This document shows, one piece after another, positions 1 to 13,700 of a stretch of 64,000 nucleotides of DNA; within the stretch, counting starts at the first letter, position 1; each line of letters begins with the position of its first letter. Origin of the DNA: Euprymna scolopes (taxonomy: Eukaryota). A program made the translations under genes and the position numbers. The stretch lies in assembly GCA_053919585.1 (NCBI GenBank), contig CM132813.1; one strand, written 5' to 3'. Under the pieces are notes generated by a model. It worked only from the letters and a program-made list of their open reading frames with translations. It was not told where the DNA came from and made no database searches.

Positions 1-263
1 AACAATTAAGCAAAATCATTTATCCCACTTTCCACTGAAATTAACATGGTTTGAAGTAATATAATGTTGTACCATAAACGGCTTTAAGCAGTGATACATG
101 CTGATACTATTTTCCTATGACTACGCATTTACGTTAGTTAATGTTGTATTGTATTAAAACGTCCTGGAGGAAAAAGAGGTTCCACTTTTCCTTTTCATTG
201 ATCATAACCTAAAGAAAAACAGGAAGAAGAAAATAGATCAAATAAGTGGTTGCCACCACAACA

Positions 264-2367
264 GTTGGTAAAACATCCTTACGAAAAGAAGAGAAAAAGG
301 TTCGAGTTGTGTAAACTACTCTAAGCATAGTAGCTGGAAAACAACGTTGAGTAGCAGAAAAAAATCCTTTTAACAATATGAAGGCCAACAGGGCCTAACC
401 ATGGTAATTTTAAATAAATGGGACAATGTGATGGACCAATACGTTTAACACTATTAAATGTAGCAATTTTACGTTCAATAGTAGTTTTTATTATATTTAT
501 GGGATATCCATTGCTAAGAAAAATATTTGTGATTTCACCAAGTTCCGCATCAAGACGGTTTGGTGAAGAAATCATAAGTGCACGATGTGTAAGAGCGCTA
601 ACGAGGTTTATTTTTCTAGACTGAGGGACAAAGGAAAACCAATTAAGATATAGCCCTGTAAATGTAGCGTTTCTGTATACAGAGGTCTCAAACGTAGAAC
701 CAACTTTAGAAACACGAACATCGAGGAATGGGAGAGAGCCACAGTCCTCGACCTCCATAGTAAATTGTAACGATGGATGCAAGTTGCAAAGAAGACGAAG
801 AAACTGTTCATCTTCACTCCGTGAGGGAAAGCATACAAAAGTGTCATCAACGTAGCGTGTATAGAATGTTGGCTTAGTAATTTTGGAAAATAATTCGTTT
901 TCCAAAAATCCAACGAAAATGGTGGCTAGCGAAGGACCAAGAGGGCTACCCATAGATATCCCATCAATATTCCGGTACATAATGTTGTTGAAACAAAAGG
1001 AGACTGATTTAGTAGCAAGTTCCATTAGTTCAACGAAAATTCGCTCAGGAAATTGTGGAGATTTTGAGGGGCCACGATATAGATAGTCAGCACAAATACC
1101 TATGGTTTCATCCAAATGTATATTAGTAAAAAGACTATTAATGTCAAAGGAAGCCAAGAACTCGGTATTTTTAGATAAAGATAATTTTTGTATATGAGAC
1201 ACGAATTGAAAAGAATTCGAGATACAATGGACCGAATAAAAAGAAAGCACAGGTTTAAGAAGATCAATCAACCATTTCCCAAGTTCGTGTTGTGCAAAAC
1301 CCAACATACATAAAATGGGTCGCAAAGGAATGTTAGGTTTATGAACCTTGGGTAAACCATACATTCTAGGCCTTTGAGGGCCAATGGGTCGGATTCTATC
1401 ATAAATCTCCTTAGAAATAAACCCGCTTTTATAAAGTTGAAGAAATCTTTTCTGGATTTTTATTTCCATACGAAAAGTGTCATCATGGCTTAAATCATCC
1501 AACCGGAGAAATTTATTTTTATCGTCCAAGATTTGTAACATTTTGGAGATATAATCCGTTTTGTTAAGTATAACAACGCCCGATCCTTTATCCGGCGAGA
1601 AAGATAAATGTCGGAATTAGACCTAATTAATTTTTCCGCTTCAAAATGTTTTTTCTGCCAAACAAAATCGCTAAATTTAGTATTTATGGCATAAAACCTC
1701 CGACCTAATTCGCCCAACTGAATTTTAACACTAGTTAATTCATCAGTGGAGATAGGCGAATGGTGTTTTAATTGAGTATATAATAATTCAATTTCACTCA
1801 ATATTGAAATTTTATCAACATATAGGGAAGGAATGCAAAATTGTAAGCCAGCAGATAAAACAAATTCTTCCGTATTGGACAAAACATAAGAAGAATAATT
1901 AAATATATATTTATCCAAATTTGTTATAATCCCAAACTTCTTAGTAATTAATTTTTGTTTTAATATTTATGATAAGAAGAAGTACATTTATTGCGGGTAA
2001 AATTATCGCCATTGGATAAAAACTTGGAAAACCGGAGTTTATCAAAGAAAGATAGTTCTTTCCAAACCATGGCCCAAAGTAAAAGGTGTTTACTACGTAA
2101 CGAATTATATGTATCGGAATTAAATAGGATTTCATCTTGTACTGCCAATGTATTTCTACATTTAATTTTAGAAATACGATGACAGATATAACCGGGAGCA
2201 ACATGATTTAGGCGGCAAGATTTAAGAAATTCCATCCTACACTTCAAAACGATTAATTTATTTTTAATACGTATAACTTTGTTTAACGTTTTGATAAATT
2301 GTAAGCTGTACCGACCTCGAAAATATGTAAGTAAATTCTTGGTACAGCAAAATGGTAATAATTTCAC
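264..2367 (-). mobile_element. Penelope-like retroelement (PLE), frameshifted, truncated before the GIY-YIG endonuclease
   Basis: Three consecutive minus-strand ORFs in different frames (1960-2367 with N-terminal FLKSC..V.P motif; 1490-1918; 321-1541) join into one PLE protein. A further frameshift in the A-run near 360 continues as ...FPATMLRVVYTTRTFFSSFRKDVLPT to about 264, after which similarity is lost. Confidence 0.9.
321..1541 (-). pseudogene. PLE-type reverse transcriptase domain (disrupted ORF fragment)
   Basis: Motifs PRMYGLPKVHKPNIPLRPI, SFDINSLFTNI, GISMGSPLGP, YTRYVDDTF, FTMEVE..GSLPFLDV, VYR...TGLYLNW are typical of Penelope/Poseidon RTs. Confidence 0.92.
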
Positions 2368-2422
2368 CTGCCCGTTTTTTTTTTATTTTCTTTGGTAGTT
2401 AAATTAAATTATGTTTCCTCTG

Positions 2423-2426
<4 letters not shown>

Positions 2427-2482
<56 letters not shown>
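2427..2482. repeat. (TA)n microsatellite (one of more than 20 in the window, e.g. near 10555, 27861, 28113, 29088, 33854, 40349, 41850, 49214, 60176, 63128, 63408)
   Basis: Direct reading of dinucleotide runs. Confidence 0.98.
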
Positions 2483-2485
<3 letters not shown>

Positions 2486-2568
2486 TAGAAATGGTAATTA
2501 ATAAAAACTGAAGAAAGTGTTCAATACTTTTGTAGAGACAAATATGCGTTTTATTTTTTTATTAACTA

Positions 2569-2755
2569 TCTTTCTGTGAAGGTACATTATTGCTTCAGTT
2601 ACCCGGCCGTTTTTTTTTGTTTTTTTTGCTGTCTGTGTCTTCCTCAGAATTTTACAGCCGTATAACATAATCAAATGCTGTAAAAGTCTGAAGAAGCTAC
2701 AAGCGGCCAAAAACCGGCCGGGTAGCTGAAACAATAATGTAACTTAACAGAAAGA
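2569..2755. repeat. Inverted repeat made of two head-to-head hammerhead-bearing units
   Basis: 2569-2658 is an imperfect reverse complement of 2677-2755 (tctttctgt..tacattattg.ttcag.tacccggccg versus cggccgggtagctgaaacaataatgta..acagaaaga). Confidence 0.85.
2678..2750 (+). ncRNA. Type I hammerhead ribozyme, core intact
   Basis: CUGAAGA 2688-2694; stem II AGCUAC/GUAGCU extended by CGGCC/GGCCG; GAAAC 2728-2732; stem III ACA-AUAA-UGU; GUA triplet 2739-2741; stem I AAGU/ACUU plus CUGU/ACAG across an internal loop. Confidence 0.82.
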
Positions 2756-3404
2756 CGCGGTAATNNNNNNNNNNNNNNNNNNNNNNNNNNNNNNNNNNNN
2801 NNNNNNNNNNNNNNNNNNNNNNNNNNNNNNNNNNNNNNNNNNNNNNNNNNNNNNNNNNNNNNNNNNNNNNNNNNNNNNNNNNNNNNNNNNNNNNNNNNNN
2901 NNNNNNNNNNNNNTTATTATCATTCTATTTCATATGATACAATATATTTATCACATGAGGAATATTTTAAATTTTGGGGTGCATGATTTTTTTACATATA
3001 AAAAAATCGACAATATTTACAAATAGATATTGTGAAATAGCGATAAACACCAAGAAAATAAAAAAATATTGAAAATAATGTAATTTGCATAAATGCATTA
3101 TGTTTACCATCAGGTTCTTCCTAGAAAATTTACAATATTGCCTTTTTTTAATTCGCATATTTAAATGCATGTATATCTTGACAGTTAATAATGGAGATTA
3201 ATCTATGGTTTGGATATATCTTAAATTGTTTTTCTTAAATTAATCGAGCCGTAAAATTATTGAAGTAACTTTAATAAGTGTTATGGTTGTGTTTTATTGA
3301 AAGAAATAATTTGTCTTTATTAATTTTAAGATACAGGGGAGGTGATTAAATCCGTTTTCTTTATTTTTTAAATATTTCTAACCATGAGGATGTTTTATAT
3401 CTTA

Positions 3405-3672
3405 TGGTTTCTTTTGTTTTACGGCATATCAACCCTTTTCTGGTTATTTAATGCCGAATCCAAAGATCCGGACGAAATGTTTTTTTAATAGAATATATTT
3501 GTTTTTTTCAAGTCGGTTTCTATTTAACCCATAGTCGGGACCCTTACAGGTCCTACCACTCCAGGTCAGAGTGGACCTGGGAGGAATGACAATTAAAGGG
3601 TGGCTCCACACTCCCCATATCCGCAAGCTGGGGCCTCGCCACTGGATATACTTTAAGTTCATATCCAGGACC
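3405..3672 (-). mobile_element. SINE-like short retroelement, family A (copy 1)
   Basis: Reverse complement of the elements at 36122-36411 and 56292-56561 (shared ggtcagagtggacctggga, tggctccac, ggcattaaataacc, gttgatatgccgtaaaacaaaa). Confidence 0.8.
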
Positions 3673-4879
3673 AATTTCTTAAGAACAAATACTTTTAATT
3701 TTCTTATATAGTATTACTGTTCCTCCGAATAAAAATAACACTAATAATAAAAAGTGTGAATAACATCATACTGTATCACAAAACTTGATTCCTGAACAAG
3801 TGTACAGATCGAGACATAGAACATCCTCGTATGTGTGTCATATTTTCTTTTTTTGATGTTAATTTTGACGTTTTATTTGAAAGTTAACAGAGGGTAAATA
3901 GTTTCCTACTCATCGCTTTTAATAGACATTTTCCTGTGTGTTTTCTTCTTTTTTATTAATGATATCAGTCAATATCAATAAACACAGACGGGGCTGGCCA
4001 GTCTGAAGGGAATTTATCAAAGAGAAGGCGCTGTTTATTAATGCAATAAACAGTTGTGTATCATTAAAGAGACTTCTTTTATCTAACGTTATAAGCTTTT
4101 TATATTATTTTATTTGAACTGAAATTTATTCATTCGCGAATTTTAAAGGCGTTTATTTTAAGAGGTCTATTATCAAAGAACTTGCCAAGGTATATTAAGC
4201 TAAAGAGAATGTTTGCTTGTGTAAGTCATTTTTGTGTTATTTTTTTTCATTATAATATTTTCTAAATTTCTAAACGACTATGGAATAAGCATTTGTTCTT
4301 AATTATTCGTCACAGTAATATGGACGGTAATGCATTCACTGTTAAAAACTGAGCGCGTCGCATCAAATGACTGGAACGTTAGACAATAAATTAACGCTGC
4401 TACATGTTTGGTTTATCATTTTTCTGCTCTACTATTTTTCAAATTTTATTTAATGGTGAATAAGAGATTACTCGAACTATTCTAATTTGAAGTTTTTATG
4501 AGCAAGTATGCCATTTCCGTATTGTGAGATTATAGGTTGCTTCTTGCTGGGAAAATAAAGAAGCAAGACGTTTTTGACAATTATGCTGTAATTTAGTGTA
4601 ACCAACACATATGTAGAAATCAAAAAAAGTTTTTTCTGATCTTTCAACTGATCATAAAGTTTATTTTTATGGGCATTACCAATCCAATCGAACAAATTTT
4701 GCCTAGTGCCAGAAGAAGGAAAGAATGAGATATACTGTTTTGCTTACAACTTACCTGGAAGTCTTAAATGCTTATTCTAAGCTTACAAACTTAGATACTT
4801 ATTAAAGGTGATATCTAGAATATTCCTACAACGTCATTTGCAACTTGTCTCGTCTCAAAGCATTGAACTGACTATAAAT

Positions 4880-5532
4880 GTTATTGTTCTTTCTTACTTG
4901 ATGTTTTCACGACATTTCTGCTAACTATATCTCGGCCCTTTGTCAGGTGGTAACCACGACGGAGTAGGAACTTCGAATCTGGTAACGGCATCCTCAGCAA
5001 TAACTACTTTCCGTAGGTCTTATCGTCTCACAACGTTTTCGCCAAGTAAGCCTCTGCCGTACTTTGGGTAGGATTGAAACCGCTACCTTCAGACAAATCT
5101 CACTCGTAACCGTAGAGATTCAACGTCTCTATGCAAAACGTCTCGGGCCCCGAAGGGCGATCAAGGTTGGATATTTTGGTCCTATAAATTCTCGTTGTTT
5201 ATTATCTGATCTTTCGTGGTCGGGTCCGTACTGAATGGTATATTAGTTGGTGGAATTCATTATTGAGGCGATTATTATTTATTAATTTTATTTTTATTGC
5301 GGGCTATTATCCTCATCTTTCTTAGTTGATGTTTTCACAGCGTTTCGACAGACTATGTCTCTGACTTTCGTTAATAAAAAACGGCGAGACTACAGCATCT
5401 ATGGAAAGCAGTAATTTCTGAGGATGCAGTTTTGAGATTCGGAGTGCCTATCCTGTTGCGGATACCATCTAACGTCGGAAAAACATAAAACTAAGACAGA
5501 TGAGGATAATAGTCCGCGATAAAAATAAAATT
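4880..5532. mobile_element. Decayed PLE-derived non-autonomous repeat cluster with an inverted repeat and relic HHR motifs
   Basis: Inverted arms at about 5284-5336 and 5478-5532. Minus-strand relics (cctgacaaag...cagaaatgtcgtg; tcgaaacgctgtg) resemble the 14101-14417 element. Confidence 0.55.
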
Positions 5533-6015
5533 CATACTATTATCGCGCAATACAATTTATTTTGCTCGCTTCGATGGTTCAGAATGCCGGTCTTGTACTG
5601 AAGAGATCGTATGTCTTAATAAAGAGAAACCAGATACGCATTTACAGTTACTCGTATTACATAAATCATTTGGACAACTGATCTCATCTTGAGTAGCATT
5701 TTTACAATATTTTTACGATGTAACCTCAGCCATTCTTCAGATGTATCTTACAGAACTCATGAATATGCACATAATTTTGAACCAGAGAAACATGTTCCCG
5801 TTCCGTCAGCCATGAGTGCATAGACGCCCTATGTAATTCAGGATTGTATTTTAAGTCCCCGATTAAGGGATTAATTTTAAAGCTTCATAAAATATATCTC
5901 ATTTTACTTAATGTTTCCAAGTATTCTAACCACAAGTTCTTGCAAATAATTCTAGTATTTTAAACGTCTACTACCTATCTTATTCCTAGATGTAAATATC
6001 ATATATATATATATA

Positions 6016-6056
<41 letters not shown>

Positions 6057-6519
6057 CTAACTTACTTACTTACAAGTGGTAGTCACACAGATCACAATCA
6101 AAGATTTCTCTTTGAGACCAGCATGTGACCGTCTCAGAAATCGTGGTCACAATAAGTCTCTCAGATTTCTAGTATTATCCACCTCTTTCTATAACCACTG
6201 AATATCAACGTTTTTTATCGTAACAGTCGCTTACCATTACATCAACTGCTTGATTGAGGGCCGATAACGGTGCACACAAAGGAAACTTCACATTCCTCCC
6301 CTGCAGTTATTTTGTCCAGATTGCATTGCACTGTAAAGAACCTACTGTTAATTTTATAAAATTATTTTGGAATATAACGGTTTGAAATAAGGTTTAAAAT
6401 GTTAAAGTCAAAGCATTTTTTTTAAGTTAAATATTTTTGTCGATCTATATTATATTATTATTTAAAAAAACAAAATCTTCTCTTCATTTTATACACTTCC
6501 CCTTTCTGTTTATGGGGGG

Positions 6520-6914
6520 ATAATCGCTGAAAATTAAGAGTTATGAACTATTGTACTTTTAACATAAACATTTACTTTAAACGCGCACGTGCCATATCAA
6601 ATAACTATTCATTTTATATGTTACGCATTTCTACTTGTGTGGAAAGAAAACTTTTCAGATTCAGTTGAAATGTAAGGGTATACATGATGCACATATTTGT
6701 ACAAATGGCTGGTTGATGTCTTTATAGGATTATTTGGTTATAGATTATCTACACCTATCTACAATATTCCCATACAAAGTATACTTTAGAACACTGCCAG
6801 ATATATAAAGTACATATATGTAAATTTTCATAAAAATCGGATCAGCTATTGTAGATTTTATGGAAATCGAACCCGCGCACATACGCAATATTCCTTTTTA
6901 TATATTAGTAGAGA
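6520..6914 (-). mobile_element. Helitron/Helentron-like non-autonomous element, 5' part
   Basis: Minus strand starts A|TCTCTACTAATATATAAAAAGG, followed by ...gatccgatttttatgaaaatt, a common non-autonomous Helitron 5' pattern. The same 5' start occurs at 59500. Left boundary approximate. Confidence 0.5.
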
Positions 6915-7329
6915 TTTTTCTTTGTTCTATTAAGATAGATAGTTTCCATTTTTCCTACATACATTGTCCAGCGTAGCCGACATTTGAAGATCTACAAATA
7001 ATATAACTTTAGAAATTATTTTCTAATATTAGTGTTACGGAACGATACTTGTCACTTTTGCATAGTTTATTGGGGGAGCTGTGTTATGATCTTTCGAGTG
7101 TTGTCTTGGACGTAAGATTCCCTTAAACAGTTCATTCCGTCTTGATATGTATTGCTGTCACTACATATTGCCTTTATCAGCTGCTGGACGCAGCATACGG
7201 TTTCTTTCTTTTCATTATATGCAGGATGAAAGTTGAAGTTAAGCACTGCCCAATGGAAGTTTATAGACGAAACAAGCCCCTGGCCATTGCGAGTTATTAG
7301 CTCAGCTATGCACGATTATTTGTTATTGT

Positions 7330-8018
7330 GTTCGTTTTCCATCGGGAATTGTATAAATATTCGGATAGCATAACATAGTCCTTTAATGTTTGGGCGTTAT
7401 CCGAGTGAAGCGAGGGTAAGGATGTTTCATCTTCATATAGCAGCCACATTGTTGGCTTTAGAGGTAGTGACTCTAACAACATTCTCATGCCTCCTCACAT
7501 ATTGGAATTCAGCTTGGAAAGCAAAGCTAAAGTGTGCTGAAAAGTGTGGTGACTCTCTGGAAAAATGAGGTAACCACTGCCATATCCTGGGTTTGGCAAC
7601 AGGACTCGGCGTCGGTCGACAAGTTGAAAAAAACCCAGGTTTGGCTTCAGAGCGAGTAATACAAGTTTGTACTCTTCTCCGACGGTTCCGCTCCTCCCTA
7701 GACCTGAAGCCGCTCGACTACTTCCTTTAGTAATCCGTCGAGGACATCATCAAAATAACCTCTCACAACACAAAAACCATCCTGGTCATCGCCGTCCTGA
7801 GAGTATTCGCCGACATCCAGCCAGTGCATTTGGAAAAGGCATGCTTCCAGTTTCGGAATTGTATCGAGCGGATGATTGAGGCTGAAGGCGGATACATTGA
7901 ATATATGTCAGCTCTACTACATAATTTAGTAAACTGAATAGACTTTAAAAAAAAAAAAACAAAAAAAACTGGCAGGTGGTTTTCCTTTAGGGCGACATTT
8001 TTTCGTCAGCCCTCTACA
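7330..8018 (+). pseudogene. Decayed Tc1/mariner transposase of maT (DD37D-like) type with probable right TIR
   Basis: Frameshifted remnants MPPHI, WVWQQDSA, SLDLKPLDYF and C-terminal KACFQFRNCIERMIEAEGGYIE. TIR-like end ...ttttttcgtcagccctcta near 8015. Boundaries approximate. Confidence 0.7.
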
Positions 8019-10585
8019 TAGACCACTACTGAGTATAATGGTAATCCCATCGGCGGAATGTTTCCTGCAGATATATATCAGAACTCATCATGAAGTATGT
8101 ATTATAGATTTGACAAAAAATGTCAAAAACCCAATTCTATTCTCAATTGTGATCTACGTTTGTTTCTTCAGCAAAGTATCTGAAGACAACATATCCCGTA
8201 CAACCATCATAGTCTCGTCAGTGGGGAGTTTCCTGAACCGAATAACTATAGCTACACTAAGTATCTTGTTGGAATAGATATGGGCATTGTTGATTTTTAC
8301 ATGAAGTTGATTGATTCTTGACATACGAGGCTGTTATGTTTATGGTTGCAATTATTATATCTACCAGAAATTGAGCCAAAGGACAGTATACTGAGCTCCC
8401 GCCGCTATCAATAGGCATTAATGCAATAATGTATTATGAATCTTAAGAAGACCGTATAAGTGTGGTATTTTGCTTTAATCCTAAATTGGATGTTTCTATT
8501 GTGCAGTTGGTATTGTACTTTTGTTCCTTCTCACTATCTATAGGAGTTATTTTACGACTTACATATGGATAATGGATCTAATTAAACTTAAGACCTGTGC
8601 CGTGTGCTGTTTGATAATTTTTATCAGTGTTATTCGTAATTCATACATCAACTAAAACTTATTGAAAACTCAGTCGTAAAATGTTAATTTTTCGACCATA
8701 TAAAACATGTCAAATTATACACATGAGCAATGATGACAGTGACATTTTCCAAAATGTTGCAACAATAATACTCAAGATGTGGAAATCTTAACAAGACATA
8801 GACTATACAATTTATTATACGTCGATATAAAATGGTAGGTTAAGAAATGTTCATGCAAAAGACCTCGTATAAACTATCTCAAGTTAAACTTGAGAGGCTT
8901 GTGTCGTGTCGTTATTTTGTAAATTTGTATCTCTTCAAACCAGTTATGTGTTTAGATTTGTATGATATGCTGGACGTTCAAGCAAATACAGTAAATACAT
9001 TATGTATATAAGGATGATTGGGTTGTGCACGTTGGTTTCTGTAATGAATGTTATCAGTATCAAAGTGGCTGTTTATGATTGGTTAAAGTGTGTGTATTTC
9101 TTTTTACGCTAGTGTCTCATGTGGAGAGCGACGCCATTTTTGTATACTTTTAGAAGTGTTCGTTTATCTAGGAATTAATTTAATTCTGTATAATTAGAAA
9201 GACCTGTCTCAGCCAATTAGAAAGGATGAAACATTGATAGGGAGTCCTTATTACTTAGGATTTCGAAATCGGAAAGAATATGTTATGTCTATATTTCTCT
9301 TAGCCACGGAGAGTGTATCACACTATAGTTAAAAATATAGAATAGGACCCGATGCCAGCAGTTTGTAGTGGTAAGTCTAAGTATCTAGAGGAAAAAAACT
9401 AGTGACTCCTTCCTTTTAGAATGTTGCTAATGTGATGGTGATGTTCATCGGGTAGAATGTATCATTTTGATATCACAGCGTGATTTCCATAATGGTGATC
9501 GAAAGCTACATATAATAGTGGCTAATAGGCTATGAGTATTAAATCTATATGTGACATCTGGTGTTGCAAAGTTACCATAGGTTAGTCAAATTATTATATG
9601 GGAGATTAAGTTCATATACATTTCCGGCATAAAGAAAATAATATATTCATAAAAAAAGCATTTAAAATGTGAGATATATGTAAGAATAATACTTCTGTGC
9701 AAATTACTATTAATTAGAGTTTCATAATTATAGAATAAGTTTGCGTGTGTTTAACTTACTAAAAGAGAGAAAAAGAGAGATATTTATTCATTTAAACATA
9801 TACCAATACACCAAATGACACTATGGAAAAATCTACAGTTTTGAACTTTATTAAGTAGTGGTAATTAAAGAGAACACTAAATGTAGTTTTAAACCGATGT
9901 TGCGTCCTACCCGAAGGAATAACAAAATCAATTAAAGGAAAAATATATCAAAACATCTTTCAACATTTATTTGATATTTTTTTAATACGATTAAGAGAAT
10001 ACTTTTGGACTTTCGAACGTCTTTCACAGTGTTGTCCATCTATTATCTGTCAGCATGTGTACAATCAAAATTCATGAATTATAGTGTCAAAGCGTTTTTT
10101 TAATCAAATAATAAAGATATATGACCTGCAAAACGCGCCTAAATTCTTCATCGCTCAGCATTGTGTAATCAATAAAGCATTCGAATCATTGTTTCATATC
10201 ATCCAAATAAACACGAAGAGTGTTTTATCAGTCGAAAGCGGCTCCTCTCTGTCGCCGTTTCAATTAATAAACACACAATCTTTCTGTATGTTGAGGATAG
10301 ATTACAATACTTTAATTACCTACGACGCCGAGTAAAAACACATCATACACTATAAAAAAATAGGTTGACAAAATGAAAATGTATAAACTTTGAAGAGAAT
10401 TAATCGTCAGTTAATTGCCATCTCTGTCTAGACACTTTTTTAAAAGTGCACCTTCAAGATGAAAACATTCGTCAATTGTTTACTTATTACATTATATTTT
10501 AATGCTTTAATAACTGAACCCATAGAACACAAGATCGATACATATCAACAGATTATATATATATATATATATATGTAAAAATATG

Positions 10586-10621
<36 letters not shown>

Positions 10622-10641
10622 GTGTCTTTAAAAGCCCCACC

Positions 10642-10756
10642 CAATATTTTTGCTGATGAGACGTTGTTTCAAAAACCAAATGATAAAATTATTGTCCAAT
10701 CCTTATTGTCAATCTCAATAAAAACATCGTTTCCGAAACGATCGTACAATTTATTG
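10642..10756 (+). ncRNA. Type I hammerhead ribozyme with unusually long stem/loop II
   Basis: CUGAUGA 10653-10659; GACGUUGUUU pairs imperfectly with AAACAUCGUU around a roughly 50-nt loop; GAAAC 10735-10739; palindromic loop III GAUC; GUA 10744-10746; stem I UUG/CAA plus CAAUA/UAUUG. Confidence 0.68.
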
Positions 10757-13700
10757 ATTTTGTTTGTTCTTCCTTGTGAAACCGATTCCTGTTTAAAAAT
10801 GTTTAAAAAAAAAAAAGATGATACTAAACAAATAGCGGAGTCAGCTGACCGGTTTCGCTTTCGTTTTATCAAAGCTCTATCGAGGGATTTGTTTAGAGAA
10901 AAAAGAACACGAATGGGAATCGAGAATATGTACCAATAAAATCACGTTGTGTTACGTAATGTAAGGGGAAAATGCGGGAAAGACATTGAAAAACTGCAAC
11001 GTTATATTACTCGAAGTTCCTAGAGACTAATCACGCTCAAACCTACGAAACATTCCGTTTACAGATGAAAATACCTTCTCAACAGAACGTGAACAGTCTC
11101 CCAGATATTTAAATGAAATAATAAGTAAGCATGACTCAGCATGTAAAAAGGATTCGTGCTAAAGTTGTCTGCGCAAGATGTTTTTTTTTATTATAAAATG
11201 TTAGTAATTGAAGACCCGTATGTATCGGCAATTACCTCTGTTTTTATGTATGTCACATTTCTGATTTGTGTAAGTTCGAGTTGTGGGAATCTTCGATTGT
11301 GTTTGTGTTTATCGGATTTTTGGATGTATATGTGTTTGCTTTTACTATTATATCAGAAACTCCAAGACGTTATTTTATGCATTTCATAAAATCTTTTGTA
11401 GTGTGTTGATTGAGTTTGTAGAAAGCCAGGATATTGTTTAAGTTTAAGGGTCAGCGTTTGCTATTATTTATTATTGCTGTTTAAAGTATGCTGTTTAACT
11501 ATTTCAAAAATCCATGCACTTGCATGAAATATATTTACAATTTTTCTGTGTATACATTGTATTAATTAAAAGAGGGGATGATATTCCACGCGTTTACATC
11601 GTAGATTTTTTCATGTAGGGCAGTTACACTCATGTCGCATTACGGGACTATCCACGGGTATATTCCTTATGAATGTGAGCCACCATCGGCATCATAGTTT
11701 TATAAATATTTGTAACATCAAACAGTTTATTAATAATATGATTCCGTAATAATTAAACTTAACGTTTAATAATATATTATTAAACGGTAAGTTAAATTAT
11801 TACGATATTGCGAACATTAAATTAGCACTAAATTAATAATGATTTGATATGAAATTAGTTTATTTAATCATTTAACGATATAACAGTAAATATCTTTAAA
11901 TTTCCATATTATTTAGATAAACTTGGTAGACGAATACAATCGAAAAGGCGAAATTAAGACGAGCGCTATCAACAATGATTACATTTGTAATTGAGAAAAT
12001 CTTTCTCAAGAGACACTAAAATATGATGTGACGTGAGGGAATCTTTTTTTATGTGACTATTAATCCGTTGCGGATCTTTTATCAAACATTAAATATTTTA
12101 TTGGCGAAATGTTGTATGAATTATTTTCGCATAAAAACGAATGCAATATTTATAGCTTTGATAAAATGATATTAAGCATTAACATATGATAGACTGATTC
12201 AATTATAAATGCATAACTGTCCTTATAAAAACTATTTGAATGGTTTCATTCGGAGGAGACCTTATCGAAGATAAGCAAATACGTAAGACGAAAGGGTTAC
12301 GGGGTCATTATGCTTCGGATATTTTCGTTAAAATCCGTTTAGCATACGTTGTAGCTGATAATGCATTGTTTACACACGATTAGAGTAAAAACTGATTACA
12401 CAAACGACAGAATGGGCTATTCGAGCGCAAATATACTTTGACATACTGTGCTTAATCATGTCATTAGGTCCATTAATTACTTATTAATAAACTATCGAGC
12501 ATTTCATGGTAAACTGCATAAAGACCTTAAGATATCGCGACAAGATTATTAAGTTATTACATTTCTTCAAATATTATGCTGAAAGATCATCGTTTTAACA
12601 CTCAAACATCAGCAAATTATTCATGGGTAAAACAAACATTTCAGTTAATTATTGACTTGCAAATTAAGCTTCAATCATAATAGTCCAAGTGTCCAATGTG
12701 GTATAATGGATTATGTATACATTGCCATATCTAAATTAACATAGCGCAATACTTTGCTAGTCCTAAAATAGTATTAAATATATATTTATGGCAATCCTGC
12801 TACATGGAAACATTAAACAATCAGATAAAATTTTTGTTAATAAATATTTTGCTATAAAATATAAAAAAAATATAAAATAAAATAAATAAAATTATTTGCA
12901 GTCCTTTAAAGGAAGGTTTTTGTTATTTGTAATTATTTACATTTGTATTTTTCCGATTTAATTGTTTTTAAAGCGTCTGTTACGACGCTCGACTTAAACC
13001 GATGATTGCCGGTCTTATCCGATCAATGACTGACCGGAATTTCCGAGAATCCGGGTAAAAATTATGCAAGGGTATCGAATATTTAAAAATAAAGCAAAAT
13101 ATCTTTCTGTCTACACGAAATTATTTTTCACGCAAGGAACATCGTGCGATTACCAAATTAATGCGAATATTTTTTTTTTATCTTTCGAACTTCCGAACAT
13201 ATAAAAAACCATCAGGGGAAATAACTCTACTCGTTACATATAAAAATCGATGTCGGAAGTAATACTTTAAAATAAATTTAATTAAATATATTATCAATAT
13301 AATTGTTATTTAGAGTTGATGAAATAACAATTTTAAATATAACACTTAAAACAACTCTTCCCTAGAAACTTAAACTAACATACAGCTATCCATAACAATT
13401 TATTTTCCTTAATATAATAGACAAATGAGGTGACCTCTTAATCGTATATTTTTAAAGAATCATACTATATAAAGAAATAAATGAAATACTAAACTAACAG
13501 ACATTTTGTATATATTAATCAAAATGTAAACAAACAAAAACAAACAAATAGACAGGAATACGACTTGTAATATATATTTATGTATATATATATATATATA
13601 TATATAGATATATATGCTTTTAATTTATTCACCCGAATTTCTTTTTTTTTTTAAATGTGGATGGTATTTATTATAGAGGTCGTATTCTGTATACAACCTA

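What the first reader, a model, noticed from the sequence alone, without database searches (positions are those of the whole stretch)
2678..2750. Apparently intact type I hammerhead just upstream of the PLE
Seen: all core nucleotides (CUGAAGA, GAAA, GUA), three stems, an internal loop in stem I and an extended stem II. Predicted cleavage is after A2741. Its inverted partner (2569-2658), which is on the PLE sense strand, has GAAAC>GAAGC and a broken stem II. Inference: best candidate in the window for monomeric self-cleavage. Pairing with the inverted arm could suppress folding in a read-through transcript.
Basis: partly seen in the sequence, partly recalled or inferred. Interest (0 to 1): 0.75.

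Follow-up and report, generated by a model that had tools for sequence, protein, structure and literature searches.

The report
Retrotransposon hammerhead ribozyme in a fold-back
A complete-looking copy of the small self-cutting RNA motif that Penelope-like jumping genes are already known to carry sits here head-to-head with a ruined copy, so it is an ordinary family member that probably cannot fold or cut at this spot.

Summary
Window 2678-2750 (+) carries every conserved hammerhead core base, and the lowest-energy fold of the 73 nt is the type I three-helix junction, with cleavage predicted after A2741. A motif this good never arose in 300 composition-matched simulations. The mirror copy at 2658-2569 (-) is dead: A14>G, and broken stems I and II.

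It is not new. Hammerheads in Penelope-like element (PLE) terminal repeats and in derived retrozymes are published, as are inverted 5'-truncated PLE copies. This scan has noted the same kind elsewhere in this genome.

- The motif points away from the frameshifted, truncated reverse transcriptase on the minus strand.
- A (TA)28 tract and about 480 nt separate it from that gene.
- With the left arm in the transcript, a -91.8 kcal/mol hairpin beats the ribozyme fold (-42.3).

Public RNA reads cover this repeat family on both strands but show no pile-up of ends at 2741/2742; that test had little power. Rfam gives no hammerhead hit, but it also scores a textbook minimal hammerhead in this window at only 11.5 bits. 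The stem II base pair is A-U, not the conserved G-C.

Verdict: an intact-looking copy of a known kind, with activity untested. Low interest.

The parts
2678..2750 (+). Type I hammerhead motif. Stem I 2678-2687/2742-2750, core CUGAAGA 2688-2694, extended stem II 2695-2727, GAA 2728-2730, stem III 2731-2740, cleavage predicted after A2741.
   Evidence: Sequence. The minimum-energy fold equals the hammerhead junction. Descriptor scan and simulations.
2569..2658 (-). Decayed inverted partner on the same strand as the RT. It has CUGAGGA, GAAGC (A14>G), a broken stem II with an 11-nt A-rich insertion, and two mismatches at the base of stem I.
   Evidence: 81% column identity between the arms.
2659..2677 (.). 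19-nt spacer at the centre of the head-to-head pair. In other copies of the family, homology resumes exactly at 2678.
   Evidence: Alignment. Five different joints resume at 2678 (table 5).
2751..2764 (+). Flank downstream of the motif. It still mirrors the left arm (about 2561-2574), and the right arm runs on into the gap.
   Evidence: Joints 2559|rc2764 and 2559|rc2755 in DNA and RNA runs.
2765..2913 (.). Assembly gap or masked stretch (149 N). It hides the rest of the right arm and was left untouched.
2484..2568 (-). Sequence following the decayed minus-strand motif. It ends at the (TA)n tract and is read as the 3' tail of that truncated copy. The same junction occurs in other genomic copies.
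   Evidence: Joints at 2559 in several DNA contigs.
2427..2482 (.). (TA)28 microsatellite between the hammerhead pair and the RT copy. It is the likely insertion target.
321..1942 (-). Penelope-like element reverse transcriptase, frameshifted near 1559-1595. It lacks the C-terminal ~150 aa, including the GIY-YIG endonuclease. Family homology stops at 264.
   Evidence: RVT_1 hit. Relatives are 50-58% identical and carry DUF8422, RVT_1, HTH_animal and, faintly in some, GIY-YIG. tblastn map. Loose ends at 264.

Best explanation
This is one arm of a head-to-head pair of 5'-truncated terminal fragments of a Penelope-like element, or of a protein-less derivative of the retrozyme kind, inserted at a (TA)n microsatellite. 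The terminal region of this family carries a type I hammerhead with a short helix I, a long bulged helix II and a weak 3-bp helix III. The right arm (2678-2764, continuing into the gap) still has every conserved position, most likely because it lies close to the family's sequence, not because this locus is under selection. In the family's life cycle the motif would cut multimeric or read-through element RNA after H17, possibly with help from the element's protein (inference from the literature). At this locus it is most likely inert. It faces away from the dead RT copy and has no same-strand partner in view. Any plus-strand transcript that starts left of about 2640 would lock it into a long hairpin with the decayed arm. 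Shown here: motif anatomy, chance level, arm lesions, RT identity and decay, fold-back energetics, and the repetitiveness and transcription of the family. Inferred: insertion history, role in RNA processing, and inactivity at this locus.
For: Motif and fold.

PLE RT on the minus strand, broken.

Published description of hammerheads in PLE terminal repeats, with long helix II, short helix I, and pairs on opposite strands 100-700 bp apart: PMC4209133.

Inverted 5'-truncated copies next to the upstream repeat, (TA)n targets and resulting assembly trouble: PMC8557442. An assembly gap starts 15 nt after the motif.

Family is highly repeated and transcribed. DNA word depth is about 15 in the single-copy stretch 1-186, against 10,000-240,000 over 2512-2764, with RNA reads on both strands. 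Other copies carry an intact-like minus-strand motif at the left-arm position (joints 2559|rc2755 and rc2764).

Fold-back dominance.

(TA)n association: three of the four hammerhead-bearing stretches in the window start 1-21 nt from a (TA)n tract, while only 4% of the window lies that close to one.
Against: No hammerhead hit in Rfam at any threshold. This is weakened by the finding that Rfam gives only 11.5 bits to the textbook minimal hammerhead at 34009-34042 and 11.6 bits at 10647.

A10.1-U11.1 replaces the highly conserved G-C, and the bulged base between positions 9 and 10.1 typical of PLE hammerheads is absent.

No further copies of this exact family could be fetched, so no covariation test was possible.

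The RT copy and the hammerhead pair may be independent insertions into the same microsatellite, so the link to a PLE rests on family-level literature rather than on one contiguous element.

The arms differ far more than equal-age neutral decay of two identical arms would predict, if the right arm really is near the family sequence. They may therefore not have been made in one event.
Confidence: 0.75

Rival explanations
1. One reading: the motif is an active monomeric ribozyme at this locus and cuts plus-strand RNA between 2741 and 2742. The decayed arm acts as a switch that blocks it in read-through transcripts.
For: The core and all three helices are complete. With no upstream arm, the ribozyme fold is the minimum-energy structure or within 2 kcal/mol of it, for RNAs starting at 2670-2678. 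Helix III (two pairs beyond A15.1-U16.1, plus a tetraloop) resembles invertebrate retrozyme hammerheads that cleave as single motifs (PMC7229834).
Against: No start site is known within the 19-nt spacer. Reads at 90% identity or more give depth of only 2-4 over 2605-2697, which holds the motif's 5' strand up to 2697 (stem I 5' strand and core), and show no pile-up of ends at 2741/2742. That test is weak: poly(A) libraries, and only 23 nt of laid sequence beyond the site. Stem III does not fold on its own. The probability that all helices form together is 0.007-0.15 even in the best contexts. Single PLE hammerheads were inactive or protein-dependent in vitro (PMC4209133, PMC11167929).
Confidence: 0.12
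2. The inverted pair matters as a hairpin rather than as a ribozyme. Transcripts through 2561-2764 form a long imperfect duplex that feeds small-RNA silencing of the element family, or the pair is simply a fold-back by-product with no RNA role.
For: The predicted hairpin is very stable, -91.8 kcal/mol over 205 nt. Rfam's only sub-threshold hits here are microRNA-precursor models matching the hairpin. RNA reads cover both strands over 2698-2764.
Against: No small-RNA data were examined. All microRNA-family hits are far below gathering scores. Both-strand coverage is expected anyway for a family inserted in both orientations.
Confidence: 0.1
3. The motif is a chance look-alike in AT-rich repetitive DNA and is not a hammerhead at all.
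For: No Rfam hammerhead hit. A-U at positions 10.1-11.1.
Against: 0 of 300 simulations produced a motif as good. A second, decayed copy of the same motif lies next to it. It sits beside a PLE reverse transcriptase, a class known to carry hammerheads (PMC4209133). Its 3' half is among the most repeated sequences laid.
Confidence: 0.02

Closest known systems
Hammerhead motifs of metazoan Penelope-like element pseudo-LTRs (Cervera and De la Pena 2014, PMC4209133)
   Same: Type I topology. Short helix I (4 bp up to the internal loop) and longer-than-usual helix II. Located next to a PLE reverse transcriptase. Occurs as two motifs close together on opposite strands. Very high copy number with variable sequence.
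   Different: It has a real, though weak, helix III (3 bp plus a tetraloop) rather than the 'minimal' form. There is no bulged base between positions 9 and 10.1. The 10.1-11.1 pair is A-U, not G-C. Helix II is longer still (6 + 5 bp with an internal loop).
Non-LTR retrozymes of invertebrates, for example the mussel and coral type I hammerhead repeats (PMC7229834), proposed to derive from PLE pseudo-LTRs (bioRxiv 10.64898/2026.07.22.740005)
   Same: Type I hammerhead with a helix III of two pairs plus a tetraloop beyond A15.1-U16.1. AT-rich, protein-less, abundant and transcribed. The conserved unit seems to begin at the motif itself.
   Different: No tandem repeat is visible here. The motif occurs once on its strand, in an inverted pair, not head-to-tail. 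Circular RNA was not examined.
Inverted 5'-truncated copy adjacent to the upstream pseudo-LTR of PLE insertions (Craig et al. 2021, PMC8557442)
   Same: Head-to-head arms at the 5' side of an RT copy, a nearby (TA)n tract, and an assembly gap at the structure.
   Different: A (TA)28 tract and about 480 nt of leader separate the pair from the RT start, and the arms are only about 81% alike. One-event origin with the RT copy is therefore not shown.
PAc (Poseidon, Anolis) hammerhead, a protein-assisted ribozyme (PMC11167929)
   Same: A PLE hammerhead for which RNA-seq shows no reads beginning or ending at the cleavage site.
   Different: In PAc the motif overlaps the ORF start. Here it lies in a non-coding terminal fragment, and no protein dependence was tested.

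Membership tests
Hammerhead ribozyme, type I | Conserved core: C3 U4 G5 A6 N7 G8 A9, G12 A13 A14, A15.1-U16.1, H17 (not G) | tested here: met
   CUGAAGA 2688-2694, GAA 2728-2730, A2731-U2740, A2741.
Hammerhead ribozyme, type I | Three helices around the core, with helix I open (5' and 3' ends in helix I) | tested here: met
   The RNAfold minimum-energy structure gives exactly this junction. Pair probabilities are 0.57-0.73 for stem I, 0.96-0.99 for stem II and 0.35-0.46 for stem III.
Hammerhead ribozyme, type I | Score at or above the gathering threshold of an Rfam hammerhead model (RF00163 and clan CL00010) | tested here: not met
   No hit at gathering, nor at E<=10 on 466 nt or 85 nt. Control: other hammerhead-like motifs in the window reach only 11.5 and 11.6 bits, so the models are insensitive to this class.
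Hammerhead ribozyme, type I | G10.1-C11.1 pair at the base of helix II | tested here: not met
   A2695-U2727. Compensated changes at this pair are reported in natural cricket hammerheads (PMC2837043), so this is a deviation, not a disqualification.
Hammerhead ribozyme, type I | Mg-dependent self-cleavage 3' of H17 | not testable with these tools
   Indirect only: no pile-up of read ends at 2741/2742 in two raw RNA runs. Power was low.
Hammerhead ribozyme, type I | Compensatory base changes in the helices across family members | tested here: inconclusive
   Only one other copy is in the window, and it is decayed. The metagenome scan gave one chance match and the viral scan none. The variant table was cut off before this region.
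PLE pseudo-LTR hammerhead (Cervera and De la Pena 2014) | Lies in the terminal repeat of an element encoding a PLE reverse transcriptase (plus GIY-YIG) | tested here: inconclusive
   A PLE RT lies about 740 nt away on the opposite strand, and the decayed partner is on the RT strand. A (TA)28 tract lies between them, and the RT copy has lost its 3' end, so the repeat cannot be compared.
PLE pseudo-LTR hammerhead (Cervera and De la Pena 2014) | Unpaired base between positions 9 and 10.1, and palindromic 15.2-16.2 / loop 3 that allows a dimeric helix III | tested here: not met
   No bulge is present. C15.2-G16.2 is palindromic, but ACAAUAAUGU pairs with itself at only 8 of 10 positions, with duplex energy -1.0 kcal/mol.
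Non-LTR retrozyme | Head-to-tail tandem repeats of about 170-400 nt, each with a type I hammerhead | tested here: not met
   There is a single plus-strand copy and no direct repeat holding it in 1-12000. The gap at 2765 could hide more.

The most novel reading that the evidence does not exclude
Head-to-head hammerhead pairs may be a recurrent, distinct product in this genome. Here, other copies lose homology exactly at the first base of stem I (2678), and the 3' half is far more abundant than the 5' half. If short hammerhead units are copied with a snap-back at their 5' end, this would be a 'fold-back retrozyme' mode of propagation, in which the ribozyme is silenced in the DNA-derived read-through RNA and released only from unit-length RNA.
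Probability: 0.08. Interest if true: 0.5.

Novelty: new member of a known kind. Interest (0 to 1): 0.2.

Why it matters
Little turns on this single locus. Hammerheads in Penelope-like elements and retrozymes have been described since 2014, and their role is still debated: processing of tandem transcripts, protein-assisted cleavage, or mere passengers. The locus is a clear worked example of an intact motif that its own inverted partner should silence. It also shows that Rfam models miss this class, which matters for annotating invertebrate genomes. The family-level hints could inform how such short elements are copied, but they need genome-wide analysis. Those hints are a unit boundary exactly at stem I, a conserved 3' half and a variable 5' half, and insertion beside (TA)n.

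Tried and rejected
1. Rfam at gathering and at E<=10 on three nested ranges gave no hammerhead. I rejected this as evidence against the motif after the controls.

2. I looked for relatives of the motif to test covariation. An exact-pattern scan of metagenome contigs gave one GC-rich hit, L003, whose stems I and II do not pair; I judged it a chance match. The viral contig scan gave nothing.

3. I fetched loci around the closest RT relatives, L001 and L002 (57% and 53% identity). My strict descriptor found no hammerhead there. The L001 tail has a CUGAGGA...GAAA stretch that I could not fold into a hammerhead. These families are too distant to help.

4. I tried to show that the tails next to the (TA)n tracts (2484-2580, 2330-2426, 31380-31488) are homologous ends of one element. 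The alignment was weak at 65% in AT-rich sequence, so I make no claim.

5. A dimeric helix III is only marginal at -1.0 kcal/mol, so I do not claim a dimer mechanism.

6. The strand of family transcripts from run X24 could not be called, because the library's strand convention is not on record.

Full report
**What is there**

The plus strand at 2678-2750 reads as a complete type I hammerhead.
- Stem I has two blocks, CUGU/ACAG and AAGU/ACUU, split by an AA/A internal loop.
- The 7-nt box CUGAAGA is at 2688-2694.
- Stem II is long: AGCUAC/GUAGCU, an AAG/G internal loop, then CGGCC/GGCCG closed by AAAAACC.
- GAA is at 2728-2730.
- Stem III is ACA/UGU with an AUAA loop.
- A2741 is the cleavage-site nucleotide H17.

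RNAfold returns exactly this junction as the minimum-energy structure (-18.3 kcal/mol, z = -2.78). A loose core pattern is expected 0.18 times per window by chance. My fuller descriptor is expected 0.08 times. A motif with stem I of at least 4 bp and stem II of at least 6 bp arose in none of 300 composition-matched simulations.

**Deviations from the standard motif**

Three deviations deserve a record.
- The pair at the base of helix II is A2695-U2727, not the highly conserved G10.1-C11.1. Compensated changes at this pair do occur in natural cricket hammerheads (PMC2837043).
- Stem III is marginal. It does not fold as an isolated hairpin, and its pair probability in context is 0.35-0.46.
- Rfam reports no hammerhead family, at gathering thresholds or at E<=10 on stretches of 466 nt or 85 nt.

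I do not read the Rfam blank as evidence against the motif. The textbook minimal hammerhead at 34009-34042 found by my scan reaches only 11.5 bits, and against the type III model. A hammerhead-like stretch at 10647 gets 11.6 bits against the 45-position type I model. These models are insensitive to this class, and a 33-nt helix II costs more still.

**The partner**

The arms align from GCUGUAAAA to CAGAAAGA with 81% column identity. The minus-strand copy at 2658-2569 has:
- A14 changed to G (GAAGC);
- two mismatches in the proximal part of helix II;
- the distal 5' strand of helix II replaced by an A-rich run with an 11-nt insertion;
- C.U mismatches at 1.1-2.1 and 1.2-2.2.

It does not fold as a hammerhead.

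**Surroundings**

On the minus strand lies a reverse transcriptase of a Penelope-like element. Pfam RVT_1 matches the 406-aa ORF at 1541..321. Relatives are 50-58% identical and carry DUF8422, RVT_1, HTH_animal and, in some (a faint Pfam hit), a C-terminal GIY-YIG. A tblastn map puts residue 1 of these relatives near 1930-1942, a frameshift near 1559-1595, and the end of similarity at about residue 540 of 690. The copy is therefore broken and lacks its endonuclease.

Between the RT start and the decayed motif lie about 480 nt of leader, a (TA)28 tract at 2427-2482, and an 85-nt stretch at 2568..2484. The intact motif is on the other strand, reads away from the RT, and runs into an assembly gap 15 nt after its end. 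I left that gap untouched.

**Reads**

Runs are coded. 'Organism A' holds the stretch, and mollusc and invertebrate metagenome runs hold small shares. Laying two raw RNA runs and two contig sets at 90% identity or more showed the following.
- 1-263 is single copy (DNA word depth about 15), while 264-2764 belongs to highly repeated, transcribed families.
- The 3' half of the motif and its flank (2698-2764) has by far the greatest DNA depth, about 240,000 against about 10,000 for 2605-2697. The 5' half is therefore much less conserved among copies.
- Other genomic copies join 2559 to the reverse complement of 2755 or 2764. This means they carry an intact-like minus-strand motif where this locus has the decayed arm.
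- Five different joints resume at exactly 2678, the first base of stem I.
- No place at 2741 or 2742 passed the tool's criterion for many molecules beginning or ending.

The last point has little power. The libraries are poly(A)-selected or single-cell. Only 23 nt of laid sequence lie beyond the cut site. Depth over 2605-2697, which holds this copy's stem I 5' strand and core, was only 2-4.

**Folding in context**

For an RNA spanning 2560-2764, the fold-back hairpin is -91.8 kcal/mol against -42.3 with the hammerhead pairs enforced. That gives a probability of the ribozyme fold of about 1e-36. With only 38 nt of the left arm, the 5' strand of stem I and the core box are still sequestered (probability about 1e-8).

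For RNAs starting at 2670-2678, the ribozyme fold is the minimum-energy structure or lies within 2 kcal/mol of it. Even then, the probability that all helices form together is only 0.007-0.15. The motif could act only in a transcript that begins inside the 19-nt spacer.

**Comparison with what is known**

Cervera and De la Pena (PMC4209133) showed that metazoan PLEs carry type I hammerheads in their terminal repeats. These have a short helix I and a long helix II, occur in thousands of variable copies, and sometimes appear as two motifs on opposite strands 100-700 bp apart. Single motifs did not cleave in vitro.

Craig et al. (PMC8557442) describe an inverted 5'-truncated copy next to the upstream repeat, microsatellite targets including (TA)n, and the assembly trouble these structures cause. 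The Anolis Poseidon hammerhead needed the element's protein to cut, and RNA-seq showed no ends at its site (PMC11167929). Against that, invertebrate retrozyme hammerheads with a two-pair-plus-tetraloop helix III, like this one, cleave as single motifs (PMC7229834). Retrozymes have been argued to derive from PLE repeats (bioRxiv 10.64898/2026.07.22.740005).

This motif fits between the two descriptions. Its helix I and II proportions are PLE-like and its helix III is retrozyme-like. It lacks the PLE bulge and the G-C pair at 10.1-11.1.

**Explanation and verdict**

The most likely account is an ordinary one. Two 5'-truncated terminal fragments of a PLE-type element sit head to head at a (TA)n tract. 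The right-hand fragment is close enough to the family sequence to keep the ribozyme intact. Nothing shows that it is active here, and its context argues against activity.

Earlier notes of this scan report the same kind of motif elsewhere in this genome, including fold-back pairs and a (TA)n-seeking mini-element. I used them as leads only. In this window, three of four hammerhead-bearing stretches start 1-21 nt from a (TA)n tract, while 4% of the window lies that close to one.

I rate this a new member of a known kind, of low interest. There is a small chance that the head-to-head units reflect a distinct way of copying.

Noticed in passing
window 34009-34042 (+): A textbook minimal PLE-type hammerhead: CUGAAGA, a bulged U, helix II GUCC/GGAC with G10.1-C11.1, GAAA, CG, UU. 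It lies about 60 nt before an assembly gap. Rfam gives it only 11.5 bits, against the type III model.
   Followed up: partly
window 2484, 10642, 29149 versus (TA)n tracts 2427-2482, 10554-10621, 29089-29148: Three of four hammerhead-bearing stretches begin 1-21 nt after a (TA)n tract. The window has 27 such tracts, and only 4% of it lies within 25 nt of one. This fits microsatellite-targeted insertion.
   Followed up: partly
window 2678, and 2709-2716: In other copies of the family, five different joints resume exactly at 2678, the first base of stem I. Many copies share only the part from about 2709-2716 onward, and the 3' half has about 25 times the DNA word depth of the 5' half.
   Followed up: no
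window 1-263 / 264: Homology of the PLE copy to its family stops sharply at 264, with loose ends in both RNA and DNA runs. 1-263 is single copy.
   Followed up: no
window 2765, 29387, 34105: Assembly gaps start within about 15-90 nt of three hammerhead-bearing elements, as expected if tandem or inverted PLE structures break assemblies.
   Followed up: no
window 23699-24721 (-): An uninterrupted 340-aa Tc1/Sleeping Beauty-like transposase ORF with HTH_Tnp_Tc3_2, HTH_SB and DDE_3 domains.
   Followed up: no
window 2406-2426 and 31468-31488: Similar short sequences (AAATTATNTTTNCCT..GAA) lie directly before two (TA)n tracts. They may be the shared 3' end of an element family, but the alignment is weak.
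   Followed up: partly
L001 2620-2870 versus 4950-5200; L002 1773-2924: Distant PLE relatives in other assemblies also have an inverted partial copy directly upstream of the full ORF.
   Followed up: partly
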